Below, piece by piece: positions 2-37,027 of a DNA stretch of 64,000 bases. The first letter of the stretch is position 1. Each line of letters starts with the position of its first letter. The stretch is taken from IMG/VR virus record IMGVR_UViG_3300047445_000186, positions 186,001 to 250,000 of that record; one strand, given 5' to 3'. The position numbers and the translations under genes were made by a program. The notes beneath the pieces are model-generated. The model had not been told where the DNA came from. It did not search any database and saw nothing but the letters and a program-made list of their open reading frames with translations.

Positions 2-1327
2 AACAAGGACACGCAAGTCGGCGTGATGAAGGTCGAGCCGGGCGACGAGAACAACCAAGACGTCTCTGTGCTGGTCGGCAAGACTGATCTGCGGAAGCTC
101 GAGAAGTTCAGCCAGAATCACCCGTACGCTTACACATACGGTGGTGGTCTGAATCGCACGAACCAAGGCCTGATGGACTTCGCCGAAATGTTCAAGGCGA
201 ACATCAAGACGCTGAACCCGTTGCTGATGGCTACGCAAGAGCACAACTACAACGGTACCGAAGCGATCCCAGCGATGCCTTACACCGGCATTATCTGCGC
301 GCACAGCAACGAGTCCGAGTGGTTCGCGTTCAAGAACAACAAGACGAACGAAGCGTTCCTTGACCGTGTGTACATCGTGGACGTGCCGTACTGCCTCCGC
401 GTCGACGAAGAAGTGAAGATCTATCAGAAGCTGATCGCGGGCTCCTCGCTCTCGAAGGCACCGATGGCTCCGTACACTCTCGAGCTGCTCGCTCAGTGGA
501 TGGTTCTGACTCGCCTGAAGGAGCCAGAGAACTCGACGCTGATGGCGAAGATGAAGGTCTATAACGGCGAGAACGTGAAGGACACGATGCCGAACGCAAA
601 GCCGTACGAAGAGTACCGCGATGCTGCCGGGAACGACGAAGGTATGAGCGGCCAAAGCACTCGATTCGCGTTCAAGATCCTGTCGCAATCGTTCGATCTG
701 CGCCCTGAAGAACAACAGGCAAACCCTGTGGATCTGATGTACGTGATCGACGCCGCGGTCAAGAAGGAATCGCTGCCGGAAGAAACCGAGAAGAAGCTCC
801 TGACGCTGATCAAGGATCTGCAACGGAAGTACTTCGATTTCCTCGAAAAGGAACTGCGCGCTGCCTACCTCGACTCGTTCAACAGCTTCGGCCAGAACAT
901 GTTCGATCGGTACTTCCTGTTCGCTGAAGCCTGGATTGCTGATGAGCAATGCCGCGATCCGGAAACTCATCAGATGATGAACCGCGAGAAGCTGAACGCA
1001 GCTCTCGAAGAGACCGAAAAGCCGGCTGGGATCGTGAATGCCAAGGACTTCCGGAACGAGATCGTGAACTACGTGCTGCGGTACAAGAACAAGCACGACG
1101 TCGCTCCTCGCTGGAACGAGTACGAGAAGATCAAGGTCGTGCTCGAGAAGCGGATGTTCAGCGCAACCGAGAACATCATGCCAGTCGTGTCGTTCGGTCC
1201 GAAGGGTGACAAGGAAGCTGAAGAGAAGCACACGAAGTTCGTCGAGCGCATGATCGAGAACGGGTACAGCGAAAACCAAGTGAAGATCCTGGTGTCCTGG
1301 TGGTCGCAAAACAAGAAAGCTGCATAA
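2..1327 (+). CDS. yeaG: PrkA/YeaG-family AAA+ ATPase / serine kinase, 5'-truncated by the window edge
   Basis: Frame is open from base 2 (NKDTQVGVMKVEPGDENNQD). Motifs GGLNRTNQGLMDFAEMFK, AHSNESEW and NEAFLDR are typical of PrkA; yeaH and ycgB homologs follow. Confidence 0.9.
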   Translation, partial: NKDTQVGVMKVEPGDENNQDVSVLVGKTDLRKLEKFSQNHPYAYTYGGGLNRTNQGLMDFAEMFKANIKTLNPLLMATQEHNYNGTEAIPAMPYTGIICAHSNESEWFAFKNNKTNEAFLDRVYIVDVPYCLRVDEEVKIYQKLIAGSSLSKAPMAPYTLELLAQWMVLTRLKEPENSTLMAKMKVYNGENVKDTMPNAKPYEEYRDAAGNDEGMSGQSTRFAFKILSQSFDLRPEEQQANPVDLMYVIDAAVKKESLPEETEKKLLTLIKDLQRKYFDFLEKELRAAYLDSFNSFGQNMFDRYFLFAEAWIADEQCRDPETHQMMNREKLNAALEETEKPAGIVNAKDFRNEIVNYVLRYKNKHDVAPRWNEYEKIKVVLEKRMFSATENIMPVVSFGPKGDKEAEEKHTKFVERMIENGYSENQVKILVSWWSQNKKAA

Positions 1328-1349
1328 GCTAAAGCAGCTCTGAGAGGGT

Positions 1350-1389
1350 GAAGGCGGAGTGGAGGATATCCCTCCGCCTTCTTTAGTTT
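1350..1389 (+). terminator. Probable intrinsic terminator after yeaG
   Basis: Stem GAAGGCGGAG (1350-1359) / CTCCGCCTTC (1372-1381), followed by TTTAGTTT. Confidence 0.7.
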
Positions 1390-1404
1390 CGAACTAGGAC
1401 AAGT

Positions 1405-2778
1405 ATGGAAAAGCTTCCAGTAGCAACATATATTTTCGTGGATCGTCGGAAGACGGGCCGCGGCAAGTCGCTTCCGAATCGTCATCGTCTGCTGCGTCGG
1501 ATTAAGGACGCGATCCGCGCATCGCAACCGCAGGACATCGATGCTGGTGGTGTGAAGGGCGCTGCATCTCCGCAATCGGCATCATCTGGGAACGCCGTGA
1601 AGGTCACGCGGAACTCACTGCATGAGCCGACGTTTCATTACGCGAGCGGTACCGGGAATCACAACATCGTTCTGATCGGAAATGATCAGTGGGAACGTGG
1701 TGATGACTTCCCTCTGAGTGATGAAGACTCGGGTGCAGGGAACGGCCAAGGCGGACCAGGCGACGATGGTGAAGACGACTTCATCGTGAACATCTCGCGT
1801 GATGAGTTCTACAATGTGTTCTTCGAAGATTGCGAGCTGCCGAATCTGCAAGAGACGCATGAGAAGGAACTGCCTGAGATGGTTCCAAAGCACGCTGGCT
1901 TCCAGAAGGAAGGTAACCCAGCGCAGCTGAACGTGATTCGCTCGTACAAGAACGCGCTGCCACGCCGTCGTGCGCTGACCACCGAAGCACGTGAACAGCT
2001 CGAGGAACTTGAGGCCGAGTACGAGAAGCTCATGAATGAGCTGGGCTCGCAGTTCACGCTCGCATCGCGCGCTGAAGTGATCCAAGACCGGATGGCCGAG
2101 ATTGAAGAGCAGATCACTGCACTCCGCAGTCGGATCAGTGCTGTGCCGTTCTTCGAGAAGCTCGATCTGCGGTACACGAAGAAAGAGAAGGTCATGGTGA
2201 AGTCGGCTGACGCCGTGTTCATCATGCTCATGGACATCTCTGGTTCGATGGACGAGACCAAGAAGCGTCTTGCACGAAAGTTCTTCTCGCTTCAGTACGC
2301 GTTCATCAAGCGTAAGCACCCAGGTACGGACCTCGTGTTCGTGGCGCACACTGAAACGCCTGTTGAAATGCAGGAAGAAGAGTTCTTCACGACCCGTAAG
2401 AACGGTGGCACGATCGTTTCGCCAGCGTACAAGCTCGTGAATGATATCGTGAAGGCGCGGTACGACGCAACGCAGACGAATCTCTATCTGTCGCAAGCAT
2501 CTGACGGTGACAACTGGGACGATGACAATGCGGAGATCATTCCAGAACTCGAGGACAGTGGCCTGCTCTCAAAGCTCCGTCACATGAGCTACGTTCAGGT
2601 CGGTGTTCCGTACGACTACGGCGGCTACTCGTTCGGTACCTCGATGTTGACGCTGTGGACGACTCTGACGTCGATCGCGAACACATCGAAGAAGCTCTCG
2701 ATGGTCAAGATCGCTGATGACACGCAAGTGTTCGACGCGTTCCACAAGATCTACAAGAAGAGCAATCAGACGAAATGA
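1405..2778 (+). CDS. yeaH: YeaH/YhbH (DUF444) vWA-domain protein
   Basis: N-terminal IFVDRRKTGRGKSLPNRHRLLRR, MIDAS-like DISGSM, and SQASDGDNW; lies between yeaG and ycgB. Confidence 0.9.
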   Translation: MEKLPVATYIFVDRRKTGRGKSLPNRHRLLRRIKDAIRASQPQDIDAGGVKGAASPQSASSGNAVKVTRNSLHEPTFHYASGTGNHNIVLIGNDQWERGDDFPLSDEDSGAGNGQGGPGDDGEDDFIVNISRDEFYNVFFEDCELPNLQETHEKELPEMVPKHAGFQKEGNPAQLNVIRSYKNALPRRRALTTEAREQLEELEAEYEKLMNELGSQFTLASRAEVIQDRMAEIEEQITALRSRISAVPFFEKLDLRYTKKEKVMVKSADAVFIMLMDISGSMDETKKRLARKFFSLQYAFIKRKHPGTDLVFVAHTETPVEMQEEEFFTTRKNGGTIVSPAYKLVNDIVKARYDATQTNLYLSQASDGDNWDDDNAEIIPELEDSGLLSKLRHMSYVQVGVPYDYGGYSFGTSMLTLWTTLTSIANTSKKLSMVKIADDTQVFDAFHKIYKKSNQTK

Positions 2779-2782
2779 AGTC

Positions 2783-2816
2783 ACAACCCGGTCTTCGCAA
2801 GTACCGGGTTGTTTAC
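2783..2816 (+). terminator. Probable intrinsic terminator after yeaH
   Basis: Stem ACAACCCGGT (2783-2792) / ACCGGGTTGT (2803-2812), short T tail. Confidence 0.6.
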
Positions 2817-2847
2817 TGAATATGATAGACTGATCATAAGGACTTAA

Positions 2848-4392
2848 ATGGACAAACTCGTCATTGACTCTCGCACCGACTGGACGCCTGAAATCCTGCG
2901 CCGTGCTTGGGACGAAATTGCAAAGATCTCGGTCGAAGAGCTCGAGCTGGTTCCTGGCAAGGACCTGTACCCGAATCAGTTCGAGATCGTTTCGGCCGAG
3001 CAGATGCTCGATGCGTACGCCTCGATCGGTCTGCCAGTGCACTACAATCACTGGAGCTTCGGCAAGGAATTCCTGCAGAACCAGAAGTCGTACGAGAAGG
3101 GCCAATCCGGCCTGGCGTACGAAATGGTCATTAACAGCAATCCTTGCGTGAACCTGTTGATGGAAGAGAACCTTGCGTACATGCAAGTGATGGTCATGGC
3201 GCACGCTGGCGTCGGCCATAACGCAGTGTTCGCGAACAACGTGTACTTCAAGGAGTGGACGGCTGCAGGTTCGATCATCGACTACATGCTGTTCGCACGT
3301 GACTACATCCGCCATTGCGAAGAGCGGTACGGCGAGCGTGAAGTTGAAGAGGTGCTCGATGCTGCGCACTCCCTCGCATCGCACGGGATTGATAAGTACA
3401 AGCGGAAGCATCGTCCGCATCTGAGCGAAGAGCAACGTCTGAAGAAGCTCATGAGCGCCGATGACCAGCGCCAGCGTGAACTCGACGTGATCATGCTGAA
3501 GACGTCGCTGAATCGCGCCGATGAAGAAGAACTGATGCTCGACGAAGGCGAATCGTTCGAAGACGGCGAAGAGAATCTGCTGTACTTCATCATGAAGAAG
3601 TCGCCGAATCTCGAGCGTTGGAAGCGCGAAGTTATCCGGATCGTGCACAAGATCAATCAGTACTTCTCGCCGCAAGGTCCGACGAAGACTCTGAATGAAG
3701 GTTGCGCCACGTTCTGCCACTGGTACATCATGAAGCGTCTCGAAGAAAAGGGTATTATCACCCCCGACGCGTACATGGCTTATCTGCACTCGCACAGCGG
3801 CGTGGTCTTCCAACCGTCGTACAAGAGCAAGTACTACAGCGGCCCGAACCCGTACGCCCTTGGGTTCAACATCCTGAAGGACGTGAAGCGGATCTGCGAA
3901 GGCGGTGAATGGATCGAGAAGTCTAGTGGTCGTGAATGGGTCGCTATCACCGACGAAGACCGCGCATGGATGCCACATCTGGTCGGCAAGCGCTGGCAAG
4001 ACATGATCAAGGAAGCTTCGTTCGAACACCGTGATGACTCGTTCATCCAGCAGTACCTGTCGCCGAAGGTCATTCGTGACATGAAGCTCTTCACTGTCGG
4101 AATTCGGTACTCGGAAGACGAAGACTACAAGCACCCGACTGCTACGGCTACGGTTGACGAGATTCACGATGACCTCGGTTACGCGAACATTCGGACTGCT
4201 CTGGCTCGCTCGAAGGAACGCGTGAACTACGTCCCGCAGATCGTGGTCGTGGACGCTGATTTGGAAGGTGACCGCACTCTCCATCTGCGGTACGATTCGT
4301 ACATGGGCCGTGAGCTCGATGAGTCTGACGCCGAAGAAGTCGTGCAGTACCTGGACTTCCTCTGGGGTTACCCAGTCAGGCTCGAAGCATGA
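2848..4392 (+). CDS. ycgB: SpoVR/YcgB-family protein
   Basis: Motifs YASIGLPVHYNHWSFGK, LAYEMVINSNP, AHAGVGHNAVFANN, TKTLNEGCATFCH and NPYALGF. Confidence 0.9.
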   Translation: MDKLVIDSRTDWTPEILRRAWDEIAKISVEELELVPGKDLYPNQFEIVSAEQMLDAYASIGLPVHYNHWSFGKEFLQNQKSYEKGQSGLAYEMVINSNPCVNLLMEENLAYMQVMVMAHAGVGHNAVFANNVYFKEWTAAGSIIDYMLFARDYIRHCEERYGEREVEEVLDAAHSLASHGIDKYKRKHRPHLSEEQRLKKLMSADDQRQRELDVIMLKTSLNRADEEELMLDEGESFEDGEENLLYFIMKKSPNLERWKREVIRIVHKINQYFSPQGPTKTLNEGCATFCHWYIMKRLEEKGIITPDAYMAYLHSHSGVVFQPSYKSKYYSGPNPYALGFNILKDVKRICEGGEWIEKSSGREWVAITDEDRAWMPHLVGKRWQDMIKEASFEHRDDSFIQQYLSPKVIRDMKLFTVGIRYSEDEDYKHPTATATVDEIHDDLGYANIRTALARSKERVNYVPQIVVVDADLEGDRTLHLRYDSYMGRELDESDAEEVVQYLDFLWGYPVRLEA

Positions 4393-5042: not shown

Positions 5043-5945
5043 ATGACAGCAATTTCTCAACTCGATCTTTCTACAACCTCGGCAATTCCAGCAACGCCAC
5101 CCACAGGTGAACTCACCGTCACGGCAAAGGTTAGCAACAACAGCGTGCTTTACGGAGCACCGTATACCCGGCTGACAACCACAGATGAGTTTGGCAAAAC
5201 TCGCAGTTTGGTGATCACTGACACGCCATCACTTGTTCTTGAAACTTCCGGTGGCAATGTGACAATCCCGACTGCCACAGCAGCAATTCCTACGTCTAGC
5301 TTCGCAACTGGACACGTACAGTTTGGAAATGCCGGTACCCCCGCAGCATCCCCATATTTCTGGGGTAGTTCAGACAGCACCAGCGCATATCTTGCGCTTG
5401 GGTACGATATGGCTGCAACAGGTTATGGACCCGCATCTGTGCCGACGACGATCATTATTGGTGGCCAACACAACATTATTTCTGATCCAAATTTGACATA
5501 TTCGCCAAATCTGGCGCTTGGTCTGAATGTGCTGTCAAATGGAACGATGCTCTTGCAAGCTAAGTCAAACCCTGGCACGAGCTCGTCGTATGTCACGCTT
5601 CAAGCAAGCACTGGTATCGTCTTCAAGGACAATGCGAACGTGGTTCTGGCGACTGTGACCTCTGCAACAGGCAATCTCACGTTCCTTAAGAGCTCCGGCA
5701 CGATTTCGTACAACGAATCTGGCGGTAACAAGCGGACGGGTGTGGCAACTCTCGTTGGTGGTACTGTGACGATTTCAGTGACAGGTCTTGCGTCCGGCAA
5801 TCGCTTCTTCCTGACGAATCAGAATGGTGGCACAGCCCCTGGTTCGTTGTACGTCTCTTCGTGGAATTCGTCTGGGTTCACGATCAGCTCGACATCGGCA
5901 ACTGACGACTGCAAGGTTGCATGGCTAATCACGAACAGCAACTAA
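5043..5945 (+). CDS. Probable virion structural protein (Ser/Thr/Gly-rich, beta-rich)
   Basis: 300 aa with RBS AAGGAAA, behind TAAATA; composition resembles the tail-associated proteins nearby. Confidence 0.6.
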   Translation: MTAISQLDLSTTSAIPATPPTGELTVTAKVSNNSVLYGAPYTRLTTTDEFGKTRSLVITDTPSLVLETSGGNVTIPTATAAIPTSSFATGHVQFGNAGTPAASPYFWGSSDSTSAYLALGYDMAATGYGPASVPTTIIIGGQHNIISDPNLTYSPNLALGLNVLSNGTMLLQAKSNPGTSSSYVTLQASTGIVFKDNANVVLATVTSATGNLTFLKSSGTISYNESGGNKRTGVATLVGGTVTISVTGLASGNRFFLTNQNGGTAPGSLYVSSWNSSGFTISSTSATDDCKVAWLITNSN

Positions 5946-5966: not shown

Positions 5967-5997
5967 GAGGGACCCTAGGGTCCCTTTCTTGTTTAGC
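5967..5997. terminator. Palindromic bidirectional terminator-like element, copy 1
   Basis: AGGGACCCTAGGGTCCCT perfect palindrome at 5968-5985 between convergent genes; same element at 22708-22727. Confidence 0.7.
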
Positions 5998-6050: not shown

Positions 6051-6599
6051 CTATACGACCCAGGTACCGAGCCTGGCCTTCGCCTCGTCGAACGGAATTC
6101 CGAGACCGGACTTCGTATCCCGAAGAACCAGGCTGATCACCCAACGTTCTTCGTTCGTGCTGTTGAACACTGCATGTGGCTGCCCAACGTTCACGAGGGT
6201 TGGTGTGCCAATTGATTGCGCATGTTTTGGCCGAACATCAGCTTCATTGATCTGGCCGTACGAAAATCCACAGATGTTCGTGGACGATTTGATCAACGAA
6301 GGATCATTCAATCGGTACCAGATCATCAAGCTTCCAGCCGCCCCGTAGCAGAAGTTCAGCTTTGCGAAGTTGTTCAGCTCGCCGCTGTCAAGGTGAACCC
6401 TGAGCTTCGCCTTTGGCGGGGTGTGAAAGATCTCGCAGACCGCGACACGCATGCCAATGCGATTCAGGAATTCCAGCAGCTTCATCGGGAGCTTTGCGGC
6501 TCCCATGGTCGTATGCAGGAACGATGTCCGTGGAACTTCACGGACTACGAGTGGTTCAAGATTACACTCGAACGGGAGTTTGATGTTTGCCGCGTACAT
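6051..6599 (-). CDS. Cupin/DSBH Fe(II)/2OG-oxygenase-like protein
   Basis: HxD motif (RVHLD), distal His (NVGQPHAVFN) and RWVISL; paralog of 36455-37027. Start MYAANIK at 6599 is my choice. Confidence 0.6.
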   Translation of the reverse strand: MYAANIKLPFECNLEPLVVREVPRTSFLHTTMGAAKLPMKLLEFLNRIGMRVAVCEIFHTPPKAKLRVHLDSGELNNFAKLNFCYGAAGSLMIWYRLNDPSLIKSSTNICGFSYGQINEADVRPKHAQSIGTPTLVNVGQPHAVFNSTNEERWVISLVLRDTKSGLGIPFDEAKARLGTWVV

Positions 6600-7332
6600 T
6601 TCGTGTCCTAATGACCTTGATGACATACTGGCCTAAATCAAACCTACCGAAACGCGTATCCTTTGGGCGAGCATGATGATGACCATGCTCCCACTCACCG
6701 CCAGTAAAGAGAAGAAATTCCAACCAGCCCTGGTCAAGAGGGCCTTCGGAGTCGTGTGCGAAGACTTGGTGCGCGGACCCCACAAAGTGCAGCCACCCCA
6801 GAGGAATGAGGTAGCAGAACAGGAGAGCGTTCACTCCAAAAGCCAGCAGACCGAGAACTGCTCCAGCGACGACGAGGCTGTAGTAGTTGTGCAGGAATCG
6901 ATGCATCGGATTCCGGTACAGTCGGCTGATTACGCGACGATTGAACGTCGTTGGTCGGTTCTTCTTCCAAAACAGATACTCCCAACCAGTGTAATGCGGA
7001 TCTTTGTCAGTGTCAGAGTACTTGTGGTGCGAAGAGTGCATCCCCGCCCATTGAACCGTGGATCCATAAACGGCAAGTGTGCCTAGGATACCGAACGTCC
7101 AGTGCCAGAACTTGCTCGTCTTGAACGCAGCATGACAGAACAGACGATGCAGGCCGACCGTCACGCCCATCAAAATCCAGAGCGTAAAGAACAGCATTGG
7201 CAGCAGCCAAAGCAGACTAGCCGCGCCCGTGCAAAGCAAGTATCCACCGTACAGCATCGCCGCGAAGCCGACATACGACGCGATTGGCGTCATCAGCAGG
7301 CGGTGTCCGAAGATTTTGTCAGGCCTAGTCAT
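6562..7332 (-). CDS. Membrane fatty-acid (delta-9-type) desaturase
   Basis: Three His boxes (HRLFCH, HSSHH, HGHHH), DPH motif and hydrophobic spans; ATG at 7332 overlaps the upstream stop. Confidence 0.85.
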   Translation of the reverse strand: MTRPDKIFGHRLLMTPIASYVGFAAMLYGGYLLCTGAASLLWLLPMLFFTLWILMGVTVGLHRLFCHAAFKTSKFWHWTFGILGTLAVYGSTVQWAGMHSSHHKYSDTDKDPHYTGWEYLFWKKNRPTTFNRRVISRLYRNPMHRFLHNYYSLVVAGAVLGLLAFGVNALLFCYLIPLGWLHFVGSAHQVFAHDSEGPLDQGWLEFLLFTGGEWEHGHHHARPKDTRFGRFDLGQYVIKVIRTRNVRGKHQTPVRV

Positions 7333-7831
7333 GGAATTCGAGAAGAATGACGTCATGAAGCGCAAGCACTTCACGAGGTTCTGATGTTCTAAATGTTTTT
7401 TCTTCAGTGAACTCTTTGCCGTTCACTTCGACCGAACCGAGACAGACGAGAAAAGCGCCGTGCATTGTCTGCATCTCGCCTTCCTTCAGCTCGTGCTTCG
7501 TAACAGTAGGAAGCTTCCCGTCGTTGATCTTTGCTGGGATGCAGATCCGGGTCGTTGGTTCGACGTACGTGATCTTGAACTCTCCACCTTGACCGACAAC
7601 CTCGTGTTCTGAAGACAGAACACCAGGAACCCGATCCTTGCGGAGAACACCATCCAACTCGAACTGAGCCCGACCCTTAGTGAACAGGGTCAGAGCTTCA
7701 GTCATCATTGAGTCGCCGTCAACCGTCTGCCAACACCCTTCAGGGAAGTCGCGGAACGTGATAATCCATTTGAACGCCCGCTTGATGCGGGTTTCATCTT
7801 TCTTATCTGCTCCGTGGAGGGTCTCGAGCAC
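7325..7831 (-). CDS. Hypothetical protein, possible cupin-like beta-barrel
   Basis: GTG start, 168 aa, beta-strand-rich pattern (AFLVCLGSVEVNG); coupled to the desaturase. Confidence 0.55.
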   Translation of the reverse strand: MLETLHGADKKDETRIKRAFKWIITFRDFPEGCWQTVDGDSMMTEALTLFTKGRAQFELDGVLRKDRVPGVLSSEHEVVGQGGEFKITYVEPTTRICIPAKINDGKLPTVTKHELKEGEMQTMHGAFLVCLGSVEVNGKEFTEEKTFRTSEPREVLALHDVILLEFHD

Positions 7832-7840
7832 GGCAGGACC

Positions 7841-8209
7841 TTAAGCTTGTGCTTCGCGGACTTCTTCGAGCACTTGATAGATCAGAGCGCGAAGGTACTC
7901 TTCTTGCCAGTCGCCAACAGTCTGAGCCACTTCAGGTGTAGCCACTTCCATGCTGGACTTGTCGACGGTAGTTGTGCCACCCAAGCCGACTTGAACGTCC
8001 GCGCTTGGCGTGACGTCTACGACACGCTGCCATTCAGTCGTTGGCGCATAGCTGCGAACGTGTTCTTCAACATTAACTCCCTCAGCAGGAATTGGAATGT
8101 TCAGTGAACGTGCGAGGCCTGGCGCGCCATCAGGCGTGTACTTCACGACCATGTGATGAGTAGCCATGTCAGTCGATTCAACGACCCAAGAGAAAACGAA
8201 AATTGTCAT
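7841..8209 (-). CDS. Hypothetical protein, possible tail-fibre accessory protein
   Basis: RBS AAGGA, TAAATA 22 nt upstream; follows the adhesin genes. Confidence 0.55.
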   Translation of the reverse strand: MTIFVFSWVVESTDMATHHMVVKYTPDGAPGLARSLNIPIPAEGVNVEEHVRSYAPTTEWQRVVDVTPSADVQVGLGGTTTVDKSSMEVATPEVAQTVGDWQEEYLRALIYQVLEEVREAQA

Positions 8210-8248
8210 GATGTTCCTTAGAAGTTCGAACTATTTATTCTGGCCGGA

Positions 8249-9253
8249 TTAGCCGTTCATGGCGCCGTACGTGTTTCCCCAACCTGCGGGCCAGCTGATA
8301 ATACTTGTGTTGTCAACGGCGGTTCCTGGGGGTCCACCACCTGCACCACCTGTTTGGCCGGCGTTCACGCAACAACCGTCAGGTCCACCGCCACCAGCAC
8401 CCCAGTTACCTTGGTTGCCGCCGGCCCCGCCATCACCACCGGCAACAGCCCCACCGATAACTCCGCGACCTCCACCGCCGCCAGCGTAGTCCCAGCTCGC
8501 ATTGCCACCGCCAGCACCGCTTGCAGCGCCAGCACCGCCAGCTGCGTAGCCGCCGCCGCCGCCACTACCGAATCCACGGCCTCCTCCGCCACCGCCTCCT
8601 CCGCCATGATAGTAGTTCGTTGTTGGGTACTTGCCGCCAGTTGAAATACCATTTCGCGCTGCGCCGCCGCCACCGCCACCACCGCCGCCGCCACCAATTT
8701 GGCCGTAGTTATAGAGTGTCATCGACCCGCGAGCAACAAGGGCTGGCCCACCGCCACCACCGCCGCCGGCTCCGCCGAGAGTGCCATTGTTTGAGGAAGC
8801 ACCACCACCGCCGTTTCCACCTCTACCGATGATGTATGAGTTGTTTGTAAGAATGATGTTTGACCCGGCAGCATAACCCTGCCCCATGTCCCACGCCCAG
8901 TTTCCAGTACTACCAGAGTAACAGACGTTGTTGTTCACGATGTCCGCGTAAACGGGGGAACCACCATTCCAGCCGTTCGCGAGAAGCTGATTCCGCAGGT
9001 TGTAATCCTGTGTGGCAGAACCGAGAGTCTGCCAGAATGTGAACGTTCTAGTCACATTCCGGAACGTGCCAACTTGAAGTGCGCCAGATGATGCAATCGT
9101 TCCGTACCCACCGCTTGAAGTACCAGCAGATACGTAATTTCCTGAGCCGTACCCGCCGTTATTTCGGTAGTATTCGCTTAGTGAAATTGGATTACCACCA
9201 CCGAACTCACCCTGGAGCGTGCTGAAAGAAACTGAACCAGTTCCGATCGTCAT
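8249..9253 (-). CDS. Glycine-rich tail-fibre tip adhesin (gp38-like polyglycine protein) B
   Basis: N-terminal SFSTLQGEFGGGNPISLSEYY; multiple GGGGGGG runs separated by aromatic-rich loops. Confidence 0.7.
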   Translation of the reverse strand: MTIGTGSVSFSTLQGEFGGGNPISLSEYYRNNGGYGSGNYVSAGTSSGGYGTIASSGALQVGTFRNVTRTFTFWQTLGSATQDYNLRNQLLANGWNGGSPVYADIVNNNVCYSGSTGNWAWDMGQGYAAGSNIILTNNSYIIGRGGNGGGGASSNNGTLGGAGGGGGGGPALVARGSMTLYNYGQIGGGGGGGGGGGAARNGISTGGKYPTTNYYHGGGGGGGGGRGFGSGGGGGYAAGGAGAASGAGGGNASWDYAGGGGGRGVIGGAVAGGDGGAGGNQGNWGAGGGGPDGCCVNAGQTGGAGGGPPGTAVDNTSIISWPAGWGNTYGAMNG

Positions 9254-9254
9254 C

Positions 9255-10658
9255 TTAGTATCTCCAGTTGTCGGCCTCGATCAGGACGTTATCCGCCAGA
9301 TCGCGCATCTGCATCGCCATACCACCAGGGCCTTCAGAGTTATTGATCTGGATTTCAATCAGATTACCACCTGGAATGAGATTGAATGTGTTCGAAGTGT
9401 ACACTGCGCCGAAGCCCATGTTCGTGGTCAGTCCGATTTGAACACCGTTCACGTACATGTCGGTCATGATATTGTCGGTCGAACCAACAAGCTTACCTGT
9501 GACGTTCCCACCGCGATTATTCCACCAGACTGAACGCCACCAGATTGAACCTGTGACCCCGGCCGCTTGAGCATTCTGATTCACCCACAACCAGTTCCAG
9601 ATACCGGTATTCCAGCCAGGAGAAACGCCGTTCGTGTTGATACCGAGCGTTCTACCTTGGGAGGTGAACATGTTACCGAGAGTCGTCGCGCCCCAGTTGT
9701 TGAAGAAGCCGAGCACACGACCGAAAGAGCCGGCCCAGATCGGATAACCTGCACCTTCAGATGCGATCGCCCAACCAGCACCACCGCCTCCACCACCGCC
9801 AGCTTCCGTGTATCCACCACCAGCATAACCTGGTTGGCCAAGATTACCGCCATTGCCGCCAGCGCCAGACAGTCCGCCGAGATTAGCACCACCAGCACCA
9901 CCACCGTAGAATTCAGAGCGTGCGCCCCATTGGCCAGCGCCCGGTCCACCGAAGTTATTTCCTGGAGCTCCACCGCCACCGCCACCTTGCCAGCCAGCTC
10001 CACCGCCACCACCGCCACCAGAGCCTCGGTTGTAGTACGGAGTCTTGCCACCAACGTATTGACGACCACCTGCACCGCCACCGCCACCACCGCCACCACC
10101 GGCAATGATGCCGTAGTTGATCAGGTATGTTGGGTGACGAAGAACAAGTCCATGACCGCCCGTACCGCCTCCACCACCGCCAGTTGGAGGATCTCCGCCG
10201 TTACCACCGCCTCCGCCCTGACCGCCGCGGCCAACAATGTACCCGTTGTTGTACAGCGTCATCGTTGAACCAGCAGGAAGTGCATCAACGAAGAACGCGG
10301 CATCCGTAGAGCCGTAACCCGAGCTGAACACGCCAACACCTGGATTGACCGTGACGGTCGCAATCAGAGGAACAGCGCCATTCCAACCTGCAGCCACAGC
10401 CGCCGCAGTCACGGAGTATGTCGCGCCTCGGTCAGAATAGATCGTGTCATTGAACACGAAGTTCTTGTTCAGACCTAGGAAGTTGCCGATCGAGATCGTG
10501 CCGGTGTTTGGCACGGCGCCTTGTTGATACGCGCTCGTAGGAGCAGGGTTCGAAACGTACGCGCCACCTTTGTAGTACTCATTCAGGCCGATGGGTCCAC
10601 CACCGCCGAACTCATTTTGGATGTCTAGAAGACTGGCTGGGCCGGTAGGAACTGTCAT
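9255..10658 (-). CDS. Glycine-rich tail-fibre tip adhesin (gp38-like polyglycine protein) A, with extra C-terminal beta domain
   Basis: N-terminal SLLDIQNEFGGGGPIGLNEYY and IIAGGGGGGGGG; directly follows an S74 fibre gene. Confidence 0.7.
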   Translation of the reverse strand: MTVPTGPASLLDIQNEFGGGGPIGLNEYYKGGAYVSNPAPTSAYQQGAVPNTGTISIGNFLGLNKNFVFNDTIYSDRGATYSVTAAAVAAGWNGAVPLIATVTVNPGVGVFSSGYGSTDAAFFVDALPAGSTMTLYNNGYIVGRGGQGGGGGNGGDPPTGGGGGGTGGHGLVLRHPTYLINYGIIAGGGGGGGGGAGGRQYVGGKTPYYNRGSGGGGGGGAGWQGGGGGGAPGNNFGGPGAGQWGARSEFYGGGAGGANLGGLSGAGGNGGNLGQPGYAGGGYTEAGGGGGGGAGWAIASEGAGYPIWAGSFGRVLGFFNNWGATTLGNMFTSQGRTLGINTNGVSPGWNTGIWNWLWVNQNAQAAGVTGSIWWRSVWWNNRGGNVTGKLVGSTDNIMTDMYVNGVQIGLTTNMGFGAVYTSNTFNLIPGGNLIEIQINNSEGPGGMAMQMRDLADNVLIEADNWRY

Positions 10659-35904: not shown

Positions 35905-36458
35905 AGTCCCGTATCAGACGAGATCAGACGGAGCGGAGCTCCGTTGTTCTTGAACGTGAACGCAAGTTCTAAGAGTTGCTTGACTGCTTCGGTGGTCAAG
36001 CACTTTTTCGTATCGAAGCCAGGGTGATGCTTCAAAAATAGCTCAGTAGCGACCATGCCAAATCGGACCGTCGTGACTTTGCATGCGTAAGTCGAGTTGT
36101 TCGTCAATTTCGCTGCTTCCTCAAGACCGATCTTCGCGATTCGGTACTCCCACCATCTCTGATTCTCCGTGACCGCATCGACGACCGTGCTCGATGACGT
36201 GACCATGTGTGTTTTCCGGCTCTTGTTCGCGGCTGCCCATTCCAGAGCGAGCTTCGTCTGCGCAGAGACATGGTACGCATTGTTCAAGAACACGTCAGCG
36301 ATCAGAGATTTCTCGATGATCTGTTTCTGAACGTCCTCAAGCGAGATGTCCTGCCCATCTGATTTATCGAAGCCGATTACTTCGTAGCCAAGTCCGCTTA
36401 GGACTTCAGCGCCAAGCTTACCGATTCCGGCCAGATGGCCCGTGATTACGGCGATCAT
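35901..36458 (-). CDS. Short-chain dehydrogenase/reductase
   Basis: TGxxxGIG (ITGHLAGIG), NNA and YxxxK (YRIAK). Confidence 0.8.
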   Translation of the reverse strand: MIAVITGHLAGIGKLGAEVLSGLGYEVIGFDKSDGQDISLEDVQKQIIEKSLIADVFLNNAYHVSAQTKLALEWAAANKSRKTHMVTSSSTVVDAVTENQRWWEYRIAKIGLEEAAKLTNNSTYACKVTTVRFGMVATELFLKHHPGFDTKKCLTTEAVKQLLELAFTFKNNGAPLRLISSDTGL

Positions 36459-37027
36459 GTGATCAAGTGCCCGATAGGTTCGCTGAATCGCAGCGAAAGA
36501 GAAACACGGATCGTGTTCTTGAAGTTCTGAACGTTGTGCGCGGTGCCGACGTTCAGCCAGTACGGTTTGTTCAGCTCAACGCGCGAGATCTCGGTTGCGT
36601 TCTCGTACTTCGCGTACCCAAGCGTGCGTCTTGCGTTCGTGCCACCGTCGAACGGATCATCTTGCACGTCAACATGTACGTGCAGTTTCTCGGCCTTGCC
36701 TTCGGGCTCGTAGAACACGGTGTGCGTGCCATCGCAGTGATGGATCGGAAAGTTCAGCGCCAGGAACCGATCGTCCTCTAGATCTGCGTGAACAGGAATG
36801 TCGCTGTTCGGCATGATCACAATCAGCTGCGCAGCATCGACGAACGGTAGAACACCGCTTACCTCGAGAGCTTCCGAGAGTTCAGGCGCGGCCGCCAAGA
36901 GCTTCGGTAGATCTAGCGTCAGGAAGCGAGGAACCTTGATCGAATAGAAGTTCACCTGACGCAGAATGGCACGCGTTAACGCGCTCTTGAACGTGTACTC
37001 GGGCTGGAATGGTTTGAAACGGAACAT
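36455..37027 (-). CDS. Cupin/DSBH Fe(II)/2OG-oxygenase-like protein
   Basis: PVHAD, NVGTAHNVQN and RVS; paralog of 6051-6599; TAAATA 4 nt before the ATG. Confidence 0.65.
   Translation of the reverse strand: MFRFKPFQPEYTFKSALTRAILRQVNFYSIKVPRFLTLDLPKLLAAAPELSEALEVSGVLPFVDAAQLIVIMPNSDIPVHADLEDDRFLALNFPIHHCDGTHTVFYEPEGKAEKLHVHVDVQDDPFDGGTNARRTLGYAKYENATEISRVELNKPYWLNVGTAHNVQNFKNTIRVSLSLRFSEPIGHLIT

What the first reader, a model, noticed from the sequence alone, without database searches (positions are those of the whole stretch)
6051..8237. Fatty-acid desaturase, Fe/2OG-type oxygenase and cupin transcribed as the tail of the adhesin block
Seen: behind TAAATA at 8232, four tightly packed minus-strand genes (three of them overlapping) run 8209, 7831, 7332 (desaturase with three His boxes) and 6599 (HxD...H oxygenase), ending at the palindromic terminator. 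Established: phage desaturases are best known from cyanophages, where they are thought to alter membrane fluidity. Inference: late timing and position next to receptor-binding genes suggest membrane remodelling for lysis, or oxidative tailoring of virion proteins or attached lipids.
Basis: partly seen in the sequence, partly recalled or inferred. Interest (0 to 1): 0.6.

Follow-up and report, generated by a model that had tools for sequence, protein, structure and literature searches.

The report
Jumbo-phage mini desaturase late operon
A 332-kb soil (rhizosphere) jumbo phage carries, just behind its tail-fibre adhesin genes, a late-promoter-driven four-gene cluster: a small unknown protein, a metal-free double-cupin, an unusually short Delta9-type membrane fatty-acid desaturase and a small iron/2-oxoglutarate oxygenase. 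This is a new variant of the lipid-desaturase auxiliary genes known from cyanophages.

Summary
Four tightly packed minus-strand genes (8209-7841, 7831-7325, 7332-6562, 6599-6051) lie between a TAAATA motif (8237-8232) and a GC-rich palindromic hairpin (5985-5968).

- **Gene 3:** a 256-aa, four-TM, SCD1/DesC-type di-iron desaturase. All nine metal-binding His are invariant in its family (profile vs SCD1 structures, E 3e-23).
- **Gene 4:** a 182-aa double-stranded beta-helix protein with invariant HxD...H...R. It belongs to a large virus-only Fe/2OG-oxygenase-like family with no Pfam or PHROG model.
- **Gene 2:** a compact bicupin (pirin/ChrR-like fold) with no metal-binding His.
- **Gene 1:** unknown.

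Genes 1-3 form a fixed, overlapping trio behind gp38-like adhesin or fibre genes in all 10 related uncultured jumbo-phage loci examined. Gene 4 is optional and has paralogues elsewhere in the genome.

TAAATA behaves as a T4-type late promoter genome-wide, so the cluster probably has its own late promoter rather than being only a read-through tail of the adhesin block.

The most likely function is O2-dependent remodelling of host membrane lipids late in infection. Tailoring of virion proteins or lipids has no support. Activity, substrate and the bicupin's role are untested.

Verdict: new variant of a known kind, moderate interest.

The parts
8232..8237 (-). TAAATA, a T4-type late-promoter-like -10 element, 22 nt upstream of the gene-1 ATG
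   Evidence: The same hexamer sits 20-27 nt upstream of the orthologous gene in L002/3, L004/5 (a full TATAAATA), L006 and L008. Genome-wide, 23 of 89 TAAATA lie 12-40 nt before an SD+ATG, against 0-17% for 13 of the other 14 same-composition hexamers (ATATAA, 2 of 5). Sampled downstream genes include head protease, tail tube and endolysin.
7841..8209 (-). Gene 1: 122-aa soluble protein of unknown function with a conserved C-terminal helix motif (EEYLRAxIYQVLEE)
   Evidence: No Pfam hit; one weak PHROG hit of unknown function. Orthologues occupy the same position in all loci. In L009 and L013 the syntenic protein carries Pfam DUF7936. Only the C-terminal 26 residues match by hhalign (96% probability). 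The look-alike to a tail assembly chaperone is weak (TM 0.49).
7325..7831 (-). Gene 2: 168-aa compact bicupin without metal-binding His; the constant upstream partner of the desaturase
   Evidence: 103 homologues, none with Pfam. AF2 model pLDDT 93.5. VIA Z 10.8 to pirin YhhW (152 residues aligned), 9.7 to ChrR, 9.6 to YhaK. Invariant residues include several Arg, C97 and C130 but no His. Single copy in the genome. Absent from GenBank phages.
6562..7332 (-). Gene 3: 256-aa mini Delta9-type (SCD1/DesC-class) membrane di-iron fatty-acid desaturase
   Evidence: Pfam PF00487 scores 28.6 bits, just under the 29.7 cut-off. Family profile vs SCD1 structures 4zyo/4ymk gives E 2.8e-23. Nine invariant His. 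Two hydrophobic hairpins indicate 4 TM helices. 72 homologous clusters of about 244 aa, all metagenomic. Best cellular homologues are only 26-34% identical.
6051..6599 (-). Gene 4: 182-aa small DSBH Fe(II)/2OG-oxygenase-like protein (optional accessory)
   Evidence: No Pfam, PHROG or NCBIfam hit for it or for 42 relatives. 905 representative clusters in the exhaustive search. Invariant H69, D71, H142, N146 and R152. AF2 pLDDT 96.3. Best VIA matches are Fe/2OG oxygenases: 7v4p Z 10.3, proline 3-hydroxylase 9.3, AspH 8.7. ESM Atlas look-alikes are virus-only clusters.
5968..5985 (.). GC-rich palindromic hairpin between the convergent genes; a probable bidirectional intrinsic terminator that closes the cluster
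   Evidence: Found on both strands by the scan. Centroid hairpin -13.1 kcal/mol.
8249..10658 (-). Context: two glycine-rich gp38-like adhesin genes (334 and 467 aa) directly upstream
   Evidence: Their N-terminal ~140 aa are 37-49% identical to proteins of relatives that carry Pfam GP38 (PF05268) hits. The window's own proteins do not reach Pfam thresholds.

Best explanation
The region is a late-transcribed accessory operon of an uncultured T4-like jumbo phage. The phage is 331,776 bp, comes from rhizosphere metagenomes, and is a distant relative of Ralstonia phage RsoM2USA.

Its core is a vertically inherited three-gene module: small protein, metal-free bicupin, and a minimal Delta9-type membrane desaturase. 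The module is fixed at the 3' end of the tail-fibre/adhesin operon.

Proposed mechanism:
- The desaturase inserts into the host inner membrane through four TM helices.
- It carries a complete di-iron site (nine His).
- It uses O2 and host-supplied reducing equivalents to introduce a cis double bond into acyl chains of host membrane lipids (or acyl-CoA).
- This changes membrane composition and fluidity during virion assembly and release. It is the same kind of auxiliary function as the experimentally shown Delta9 desaturases of cyanophages.
- The bicupin, always encoded immediately upstream with overlapping stop and start, is inferred to be a dedicated accessory subunit (substrate or ligand binding, or regulation).
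- In this phage a small Fe(II)/2OG oxygenase has been appended. It is one of four paralogues in the genome and is probably a hydroxylase acting on a lipid or another small or host target.

What is shown: gene structure, family assignments, catalytic-residue conservation, synteny, and promoter-motif statistics. What is inferred: substrate, regiospecificity, timing, and any physical partnership.
For: - **Desaturase class and intact active site:**
- **Purifying conservation:** catalytic His are invariant across 25 sequences, 23 of them family members down to 46% identity and two distant bacterial-type homologues at 26-27%.
- **Trio synteny:** 10 of 10 other loci, typically with 4-8-nt overlaps.
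- **Lineage-specific pairing:** bicupin and desaturase are both absent from 50,697 GenBank phage records apart from two distantly related desaturases. The bicupin is absent around 80 cellular desaturase loci.
- **Late promoter:**
- **T4-like context:** gp37-like and gp38-like fibres, topo II, Dda-like helicase, gp44.
- **No phage-encoded electron carrier:** no ferredoxin, cytochrome b5 or rubredoxin, so electrons must come from the host.
- **Precedent:** cyanophage vFADs are Delta9 lipid desaturases active in yeast (PMC5776448).
- **Wider theme:** the genome holds a second, more canonical desaturase next to AspH-family oxygenases. An unrelated phage contig links the gene-4 family, AspH and a desaturase in one operon. 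This points to a general phage oxygenase/lipid-modification theme.
Against: - No expression or activity data exist. No RNA runs hold this sequence.
- The window's desaturase falls 1 bit below Pfam's gathering score and far below NCBIfam equivalog cut-offs.
- It is about 70-100 residues shorter than characterised Delta9 desaturases and has His where SCD1 has the water-bridging Asn. Substrate and chemistry could therefore differ.
- The host is unknown.
- A T4 gp55-like late sigma factor was not detected.
- The strict linkage to adhesin genes is not explained by a pure membrane-fluidity role.
- The bicupin partnership rests on gene order only. The complex prediction could not be run.
Confidence: 0.5

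Rival explanations
1. Envelope or receptor modification. The module, with the optional oxygenase and the sulfotransferase-like and glycosyltransferase genes seen in relatives, modifies outer-membrane or LPS-associated lipids (lipid A or ornithine-lipid-type acyl chains). The infected cell or its debris then no longer binds the phage's own adhesins or competing phages. This would explain why it is encoded with the receptor-binding genes.
For: - The trio is invariably placed right after gp38-like adhesin or fibre genes.
- Relatives carry a Glyco_transf_25/methyltransferase gene and sulfotransferase-like genes in the same block.
- The genome holds AspH-family oxygenases, the class to which lipid A hydroxylase LpxO belongs (my own knowledge), next to its second desaturase.
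Against: - SCD/DesC-type enzymes are known to act on phospholipid or acyl-CoA chains, not on lipid A.
- Module boundaries after fibre genes are common insertion points for unrelated accessory genes in T4-like phages.
- The sulfotransferase call is by eye only; there is no Pfam hit.
- There are no host or adsorption data.
Confidence: 0.17
2. Tail-fibre or virion maturation. Genes 1 and 2 (and possibly 3-4) act on the adhesins or on virion-attached molecules, as chaperones or oxidative tailoring enzymes.
For: - Synteny with adhesins and a shared late promoter type.
- Gene 1 has a weak structural look-alike among phage tail assembly chaperone clusters (TM 0.49).
- Many DSBH enzymes hydroxylate proteins.
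Against: - The desaturase is an integral membrane enzyme with an SCD-like core, a class with no known protein substrates.
- The gene-1 look-alike is below the level that means anything.
- Gene 4 is missing from most loci that keep the adhesins.
- The closest cultured relative, RsoM2USA, has no detectable homologue of the desaturase or the bicupin.
Confidence: 0.1
3. The 'desaturase' performs different di-iron chemistry (hydroxylation, or desaturation of a non-fatty-acyl substrate) together with the bicupin as a two-component enzyme. The bicupin replaces the cytosolic parts that the mini enzyme lacks.
For: - The family is shortened (about 244 aa against about 300-360).
- His replaces the Asn of SCD1's NSxxH motif.
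- The bicupin is a strictly co-inherited, typically gene-overlapping partner, rich in invariant Arg.
- No close cellular homologue exists.
Against: - The whole catalytic core aligns with SCD1 at E 3e-23.
- The phage family's nearest relatives are ordinary bacterial Delta9-type desaturases.
- There is no evidence of physical interaction.
Confidence: 0.15

Closest known systems
Cyanophage vFAD-I / vFAD-II (DesC-like Delta9 acyl-lipid desaturases; Roitman et al. 2017, PMC5776448)
   Same: - A phage-encoded membrane desaturase of the Delta9 (first-desaturase) class with three His boxes.
- Carried by T4-like myoviruses.
- No dedicated reductase, so electrons presumably come from the host.
- Presumed role in remodelling host membrane lipids.
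   Different: - The vFADs cluster with their hosts' DesC clades. The family here has no cellular homologue above 34% identity.
- It is shorter, at about 244 aa.
- It sits in soil/rhizosphere jumbo phages related to a Ralstonia phage, not in cyanophages.
- It is locked to a bicupin and a small protein behind the adhesin genes.
- Its activity is untested.
Mammalian stearoyl-CoA desaturase 1 (PDB 4ymk, 4zyo)
   Same: - The only solved structures hit.
- Same His-box arrangement (HX4H, HX2HH, HX2HH plus one His before TM4's end).
- Four TM helices.
- The profile match covers the whole core.
   Different: - About 100 residues shorter.
- SCD1's Asn265 position is His188.
- No cytochrome b5 system is available in bacteria or in the phage.
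- The substrate (acyl-CoA versus acyl-lipid) is unknown.
Desaturase genes annotated in Pelagibacter phage Mosig and Acinetobacter phage MD-2021a
   Same: Among 50,697 GenBank phage records, these two phages (three records) are the only ones with a detectable homologue.
   Different: - Only 26-32% identical.
- Closer to this phage's second, canonical desaturase.
- No bicupin homologue was found in any GenBank phage.
Fe(II)/2OG oxygenases of the AspH/LpxO and prolyl-hydroxylase type
   Same: For gene 4: the DSBH fold, the HxD...H triad, and a conserved Arg ten residues after the distal His.
   Different: - No sequence-level membership in any Pfam 2OG family.
- Minimal size of 182 aa.
- A virus-only family.
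- Substrate unknown.
Pirin / YhaK / ChrR-type bicupins
   Same: For gene 2: two fused small beta-barrels; Z 9.6-10.8 over 141-152 residues.
   Different: - About 60 residues shorter.
- None of the metal-binding His or Glu residues is conserved.
- No sequence similarity to any PDB chain or Pfam family.

Membership tests
Membrane-bound fatty-acid desaturase, Delta9 SCD/DesC class (Pfam PF00487, COG1398-type) | Three histidine boxes HX4H, HX2HH, HX2HH in the canonical order | tested here: met
   HRLFCH 62-67, HSSHH 99-103 and HGHHH 216-220. The box His residues are invariant in 25 aligned sequences.
Membrane-bound fatty-acid desaturase, Delta9 SCD/DesC class (Pfam PF00487, COG1398-type) | Ninth metal-ligand His (SCD1 H269, NSxxH motif) and the water-bridging Asn | tested here: inconclusive
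   H193 is invariant at the His position. The Asn position is His188 in the phage family but Asn in the two distant bacterial-type homologues. The consequence is unknown.
Membrane-bound fatty-acid desaturase, Delta9 SCD/DesC class (Pfam PF00487, COG1398-type) | Four transmembrane helices arranged as two hairpins flanking the His boxes | tested here: met
   Kyte-Doolittle windows of at least 1.6 at residues ~30-65 and ~149-187; the other three proteins have none.
Membrane-bound fatty-acid desaturase, Delta9 SCD/DesC class (Pfam PF00487, COG1398-type) | Significant sequence match to the family model or to solved members | tested here: met
   The Pfam score for the window's protein alone is 28.6, against a cut-off of 29.7. 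Many orthologues do carry PF00487. The family profile matches SCD1 at E 2.8e-23 over profile positions 42-227. NCBIfam equivalog cut-offs are not reached.
Membrane-bound fatty-acid desaturase, Delta9 SCD/DesC class (Pfam PF00487, COG1398-type) | O2- and electron-donor-dependent introduction of a Delta9 cis double bond | not testable with these tools
   Needs heterologous expression and FAME/DMDS GC-MS. No ferredoxin, cytochrome b5 or rubredoxin gene is in the phage genome.
Fe(II)/2-oxoglutarate-dependent oxygenase (DSBH) | Double-stranded beta-helix fold | tested here: met
   AF2 pLDDT 96.3, pTM 0.91. Most of the top 50 VIA matches are Fe/2OG oxygenases, best Z 10.3. Foldseek gives cupin/2OG hits.
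Fe(II)/2-oxoglutarate-dependent oxygenase (DSBH) | HxD/E...H iron-binding triad | tested here: met
   H69, D71 and H142 are invariant in 43 sequences with 23-40% identity to the query. Their spatial clustering in the model was not inspected.
Fe(II)/2-oxoglutarate-dependent oxygenase (DSBH) | Basic residue that binds the 2OG C5 carboxylate, after the distal His | tested here: inconclusive
   R152, ten residues after H142, is invariant. That position is typical of RxS-type enzymes (my own knowledge). Its role is not shown.
Fe(II)/2-oxoglutarate-dependent oxygenase (DSBH) | Membership of a curated 2OG family (PF03171, PF13640, PF05118 and others) | tested here: not met
   No Pfam, PHROG or NCBIfam hit for any of 43 members. 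No PDB sequence hit. Only distant Atlas look-alikes carry 2OG-FeII_Oxy_3 or Asp_Arg_Hydrox.
Cupin superfamily (bicupin, pirin-like) | Two tandem small beta-barrel (jelly-roll) domains | tested here: met
   AF2 pLDDT 93.5. VIA Z 10.8 to YhhW pirin with 152 of 168 residues aligned; ChrR, YhaK and HutD also match.
Cupin superfamily (bicupin, pirin-like) | Cupin metal-binding motifs (His/Glu ligands) | tested here: not met
   No invariant or nearly invariant His among 35 sequences. It is a cupin by fold only.
DUF7936 (PF25590), considered for gene 1 | Match to the ~103-residue DUF7936 domain | tested here: not met
   No Pfam hit, and none in the own genome (that search's controls did not ring). 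Only the C-terminal 26 residues are shared with the syntenic DUF7936 proteins of L009 and L013.
T4-type late promoter (TATAAATA, gp55-dependent) | Conserved AT-rich -10-like octamer shortly upstream of late genes, with no -35 element | tested here: met
   - (S)TAAATA is the commonest of 15 same-composition hexamers (89 copies).
- 26% of copies lie 12-40 nt before an SD+ATG.
- It precedes head protease, tail tube, endolysin and fibre genes.
- It is conserved before the orthologous gene in four relatives, one with an exact TATAAATA.
T4-type late promoter (TATAAATA, gp55-dependent) | Phage-encoded gp55-like late sigma factor | tested here: inconclusive
   T4 gp55 and gp45 find nothing in the genome; gp44 does (E 6e-26). 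gp55 diverges quickly, so absence is not shown.

The most novel reading that the evidence does not exclude
The bicupin and the mini desaturase form a phage-specific two-component di-iron enzyme. The metal-free, Arg-rich bicupin supplies the substrate-binding or docking functions that the truncated desaturase has lost. The pair acts on an envelope lipid that matters for adsorption (for example lipid A or ornithine-lipid acyl chains), which would explain why it is genetically locked to the receptor-binding genes of a whole clade of jumbo phages.
Probability: 0.12. Interest if true: 0.75.

Novelty: new variant of a known kind. Interest (0 to 1): 0.45.

Why it matters
Phage-encoded lipid desaturases have been shown to work only in marine cyanophages. 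This finding extends the idea to a clade of soil, rhizosphere and freshwater jumbo phages related to a phage of the plant pathogen Ralstonia.

It also defines:
- a distinct, virus-only minimal Delta9-type desaturase of about 244 aa;
- a constant, previously unrecognised bicupin partner;
- a large virus-only family of small Fe/2OG-oxygenase-like proteins (905 clusters) that has no entry in Pfam or PHROGs.

A minimal desaturase would be a convenient model for membrane di-iron enzymes. The bicupin may reveal how such enzymes are supplied or regulated in bacteria.

The genome-wide (S)TAAATA late-promoter motif is a practical annotation aid for this phage group.

Tried and rejected
There is no result either way.
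- **ESM-Atlas fold library:** not installed.
- **DNA search of the region against GenBank phages:** no match.
- **tblastn against phages:** nothing for gene 4 or the bicupin.
- **Pfam, PHROG and NCBIfam** gave nothing useful for genes 1, 2 and 4. The DUF3945 hit for gene 2 (E 0.04) and the VNAR, STIV-A81 and TCR hits in PDB sequence searches were rejected as noise.
- **hhalign** of the gene-4 family against the 211-aa protein of the second cluster: not significant (probability 1.3%). A weak BLAST bridge through L013 exists.
- **Word search for gene 4:** found only itself, which is why the exhaustive search was used.
- **T4 gp55 and gp45:** not detectable.
- **Expression data:** no RNA sequencing runs hold the region.
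- **A recent host origin for the desaturase:** rejected, because the best cellular matches are 26-34% identical and spread over many phyla.
- **A decaying gene:** rejected, because all catalytic His are invariant.
- **An electron-carrier role for the bicupin:** considered and not adopted, since it has no Fe-S or haem-type ligand pattern, only two invariant Cys.
Full report
**1. What is there**

The window is bases 186,001-250,000 of a 331,776-bp IMG/VR virus record (CheckV 94% complete). The region also occurs in several rhizosphere metagenome runs.

On the minus strand, between 8237 and 5968, lie four closely packed ORFs:
- gene 1, 8209-7841 (122 aa);
- gene 2, 7831-7325 (168 aa, GTG start);
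- gene 3, 7332-6562 (256 aa);
- gene 4, 6599-6051 (182 aa).

Junctions are +9, -8 and -38 nt.

The cluster is closed by a 16-nt GC-rich palindrome (5968-5985) shared with the convergent plus-strand gene 5043-5945. That gene encodes a protein with a K1-lyase_C tail-spike domain.

Upstream on the same strand are:
- two glycine-rich proteins homologous to GP38-type adhesins of relatives;
- an 894-aa fibre with a Peptidase_S74 chaperone domain;
- further gp37-like fibre genes.

On the other side lies a PrkA/DUF444/SpoVR trio on the plus strand.

**2. Gene 3, the desaturase**

Pfam FA_desaturase scores 28.6 bits, just under the 29.7 cut-off. NCBIfam DesA models match only weakly.

The word search found 72 clusters of about 244-aa proteins at 46-79% identity, all metagenomic. 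JGI labels several of them stearoyl-CoA desaturase.

In the alignment of 25 sequences (23 family members plus two distant bacterial-type homologues), nine His are invariant: H62, H67, H99, H102, H103, H193, H216, H219 and H220. H188 is nearly invariant, at the place where the two distant bacterial-type homologues, like SCD1, have Asn.

The single sequence hits mouse and human SCD1 structures at E 1e-8. The family profile hits them at E 2.8e-23 over the whole core, and hits nothing else in the PDB.

Hydropathy shows two hydrophobic hairpins, which indicates four TM helices.

Among one genome for each of 185,579 prokaryote species, the best homologues are only 26-34% identical and are scattered over many phyla. 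The mini-desaturase clade is therefore virus-specific and was not recently captured from a host.

In 50,697 GenBank phage records, only Pelagibacter phage Mosig and Acinetobacter phage MD-2021a have a distant homologue (26-32%).

**3. Gene 4, the oxygenase**

Pfam, PHROGs and NCBIfam found nothing, and the word search found only the protein itself.

That search found 905 representative clusters at E<1e-3, most of them 180-195 aa. None of 43 sampled members hits Pfam or PHROGs.

H69, D71, H142, N146 and R152 are invariant. The AF2 model is very confident (pLDDT 96.3).

An all-against-representatives structure search ranks Fe/2OG oxygenases on top: 7v4p at Z 10.3, proline 3-hydroxylase 9.3, EvdMO1 9.1, AspH 8.7, plus ALKBH6 and viral collagen prolyl hydroxylase. 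ESM Atlas look-alikes are virus-only clusters, and the more distant ones carry 2OG-FeII_Oxy_3 or Asp_Arg_Hydrox.

So 'Fe/2OG-type oxygenase' is a sound fold-plus-motif assignment, but the protein belongs to an uncurated, virus-only family.

The gene is optional. It is present in the window and L007, frameshifted in L002/L003, and absent in L004/5, L006 and L008. The genome holds three more family members, one of them inside the window at 36455-37027.

**4. Gene 2, the bicupin**

There are 103 homologous clusters, all labelled hypothetical, with no Pfam hit.

The model (pLDDT 93.5) is a compact double beta-barrel. It matches pirin YhhW at Z 10.8 (152 residues aligned), ChrR at 9.7, YhaK at 9.6 and HutD at 8.9.

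No His is conserved. The invariant residues are mostly Arg, Asp, Glu and aromatic residues, plus C97 and C130. It is a cupin by fold only.

It is single-copy in the genome and absent from GenBank phages. It is also absent from the neighbourhoods of 80 cellular desaturase genes.

**5. Gene 1**

Gene 1 encodes a soluble 122-aa protein with a conserved C-terminal helix. Syntenic proteins in the most divergent loci (L009, L013) carry DUF7936. Only the last 26 residues match between the two groups.

A look-alike to tail assembly chaperone clusters is too weak to use (TM 0.49).

**6. Synteny**

The order fibre/adhesin gene(s), small protein, bicupin, ~244-aa desaturase recurs in all ten other loci read: L002-L009, L013 and a 351-kb ENA contig. 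Overlaps within the trio are typically 4-8 nt.

What follows the trio varies:
- the convergent SpoVR/DUF444/PrkA block;
- the gene-4 type oxygenase;
- members of a second small DSBH-like family;
- sulfotransferase-like genes (identified by eye only).

The closest cultured phage is Ralstonia phage RsoM2USA (344 kb; topo II 46% and SpoVR 48% identity). No homologue of its desaturase or bicupin was detected.

**7. Transcription**

ATAAATA occurs four times in the window, always just upstream of a gene start.

Genome-wide, TAAATA is the commonest of the 15 hexamers with that composition (89 copies). Of these, 23 lie 12-40 nt before an SD-preceded ATG of an ORF of at least 70 aa. The comparable figure is 0-17% for 13 of the other 14 hexamers; ATATAA has only 5 copies, 2 of them so placed. 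The base before the motif is usually G or C.

Ten downstream genes were sampled. They include head maturation protease, tail tube, endolysin and two tail-assembly-like proteins. In the window the motif also precedes fibre genes.

The motif is conserved before the orthologue of gene 1 in four relatives whose intergenic sequence otherwise differs, and one of them has the exact T4 consensus TATAAATA.

The genome is T4-like in its replication and fibre genes, but a gp55 homologue was not detected.

Conclusion: the cluster very probably has its own late promoter. Read-through from the adhesin genes is also possible, because the 39-nt gap has no terminator. No RNA data exist.

**8. Wider context in the same genome**

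A second, more canonical desaturase lies at about 156.4-157.1 kb (PF00487, 66 bits; 31% identical to gene 3). It sits in a plus-strand island at about 149.3-158.2 kb that also holds:
- two AspH-family oxygenases;
- two gene-4 family members;
- a further small DSBH-like protein;
- a radical-SAM-like gene.

An unrelated 10-kb contig (L010) links a gene-4 homologue (40% identity), an AspH-family gene and a desaturase in one operon.

The phage encodes no ferredoxin, cytochrome b5 or rubredoxin.

**9. Interpretation**

The most economical reading is an auxiliary, O2-dependent host-lipid-modifying function expressed late. This is analogous to the Delta9 desaturases of cyanophages, which were shown to be active in yeast (PMC5776448).

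What is new here:
- the virus-specific minimal form of the enzyme;
- its fixed bicupin and small-protein partners;
- its anchoring to the adhesin operon;
- its occurrence in soil-type jumbo phages.

The link to the adhesin genes may be functional (receptor or envelope modification) or merely historical (an insertion at a module boundary that was inherited vertically). Present data cannot tell these apart. Nothing supports oxidative tailoring of virion components.

All functional statements about activity, substrate, timing and protein-protein contact are inferences.

Noticed in passing
G000:C1:149300-158200 (outside the window; loci L001, L096-L098, L100): A plus-strand 'oxygenase island'. It holds a second, more canonical Delta9-type desaturase (PF00487, 66 bits), two AspH-family (PF05118) oxygenases, two members of the gene-4 small-DSBH family, a further small HxD...H protein (211 aa) and a radical-SAM-like 484-aa ORF. 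A similar mix is seen on unrelated contigs L010 and L011.
   Followed up: partly
window 36455-37027 (-): A 190-aa ORF that is a distant member of the same small DSBH oxygenase family as gene 4 (profile E 2e-9).
   Followed up: no
window 2-4392 (+): A PrkA (AAA_PrkA plus PrkA), DUF444 (YeaH-like) and SpoVR gene trio. The same trio lies convergent to the desaturase module in relatives L004-L006 and L008 and in a 351-kb ENA contig. SpoVR is 48% identical in Ralstonia phage RsoM2USA and also occurs in >590-kb uncultured megaphage records.
   Followed up: partly
window 5043-5945 (+): A 300-aa protein whose C-terminus matches K1-lyase_C (capsule-specific lyase C-terminal domain) and a PHROG annotated as polysaccharide deacetylase. 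It is probably a further tail-spike or fibre tip, convergent on the cluster and sharing its terminator.
   Followed up: no
whole genome; in the window at 8237, 10713, 13368, 14630 (-) and 21407 (+), 24640 (-): (G/C)TAAATA behaves as the late-promoter core of this phage: 89 copies, of which 23 are correctly spaced before SD+ATG starts. The two copies at 287237 and 290730 are each followed by a near-identical hairpin-forming leader and by paralogous ~400-aa phrog_9998 genes.
   Followed up: partly
L002:6639-7323 and L003 (same sequence): The orthologue of gene 4 is split over two reading frames in the 338-kb relative. This is either a frameshift or pseudogene, or an assembly error.
   Followed up: no
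L007:7307-7981, L009:3840-4478, L013:7243-7899: Genes just downstream of the desaturase in three relatives encode ~215-aa proteins with an N-terminal PRSGS/T motif reminiscent of the PAPS-binding loop of sulfotransferases. This is by eye only; Pfam gives no hit.
   Followed up: no
window 8249-10658 (-): The two adhesin-like proteins contain long poly-glycine runs and do not reach any Pfam or PHROG threshold themselves, although their homologues in relatives are recorded with PF05268 GP38.
   Followed up: partly
L007:1950-3395: One relative has a fused TylF/Methyltransf_24 plus Glyco_transf_25 (LPS-type glycosyltransferase) gene in the same fibre-end block.
   Followed up: no
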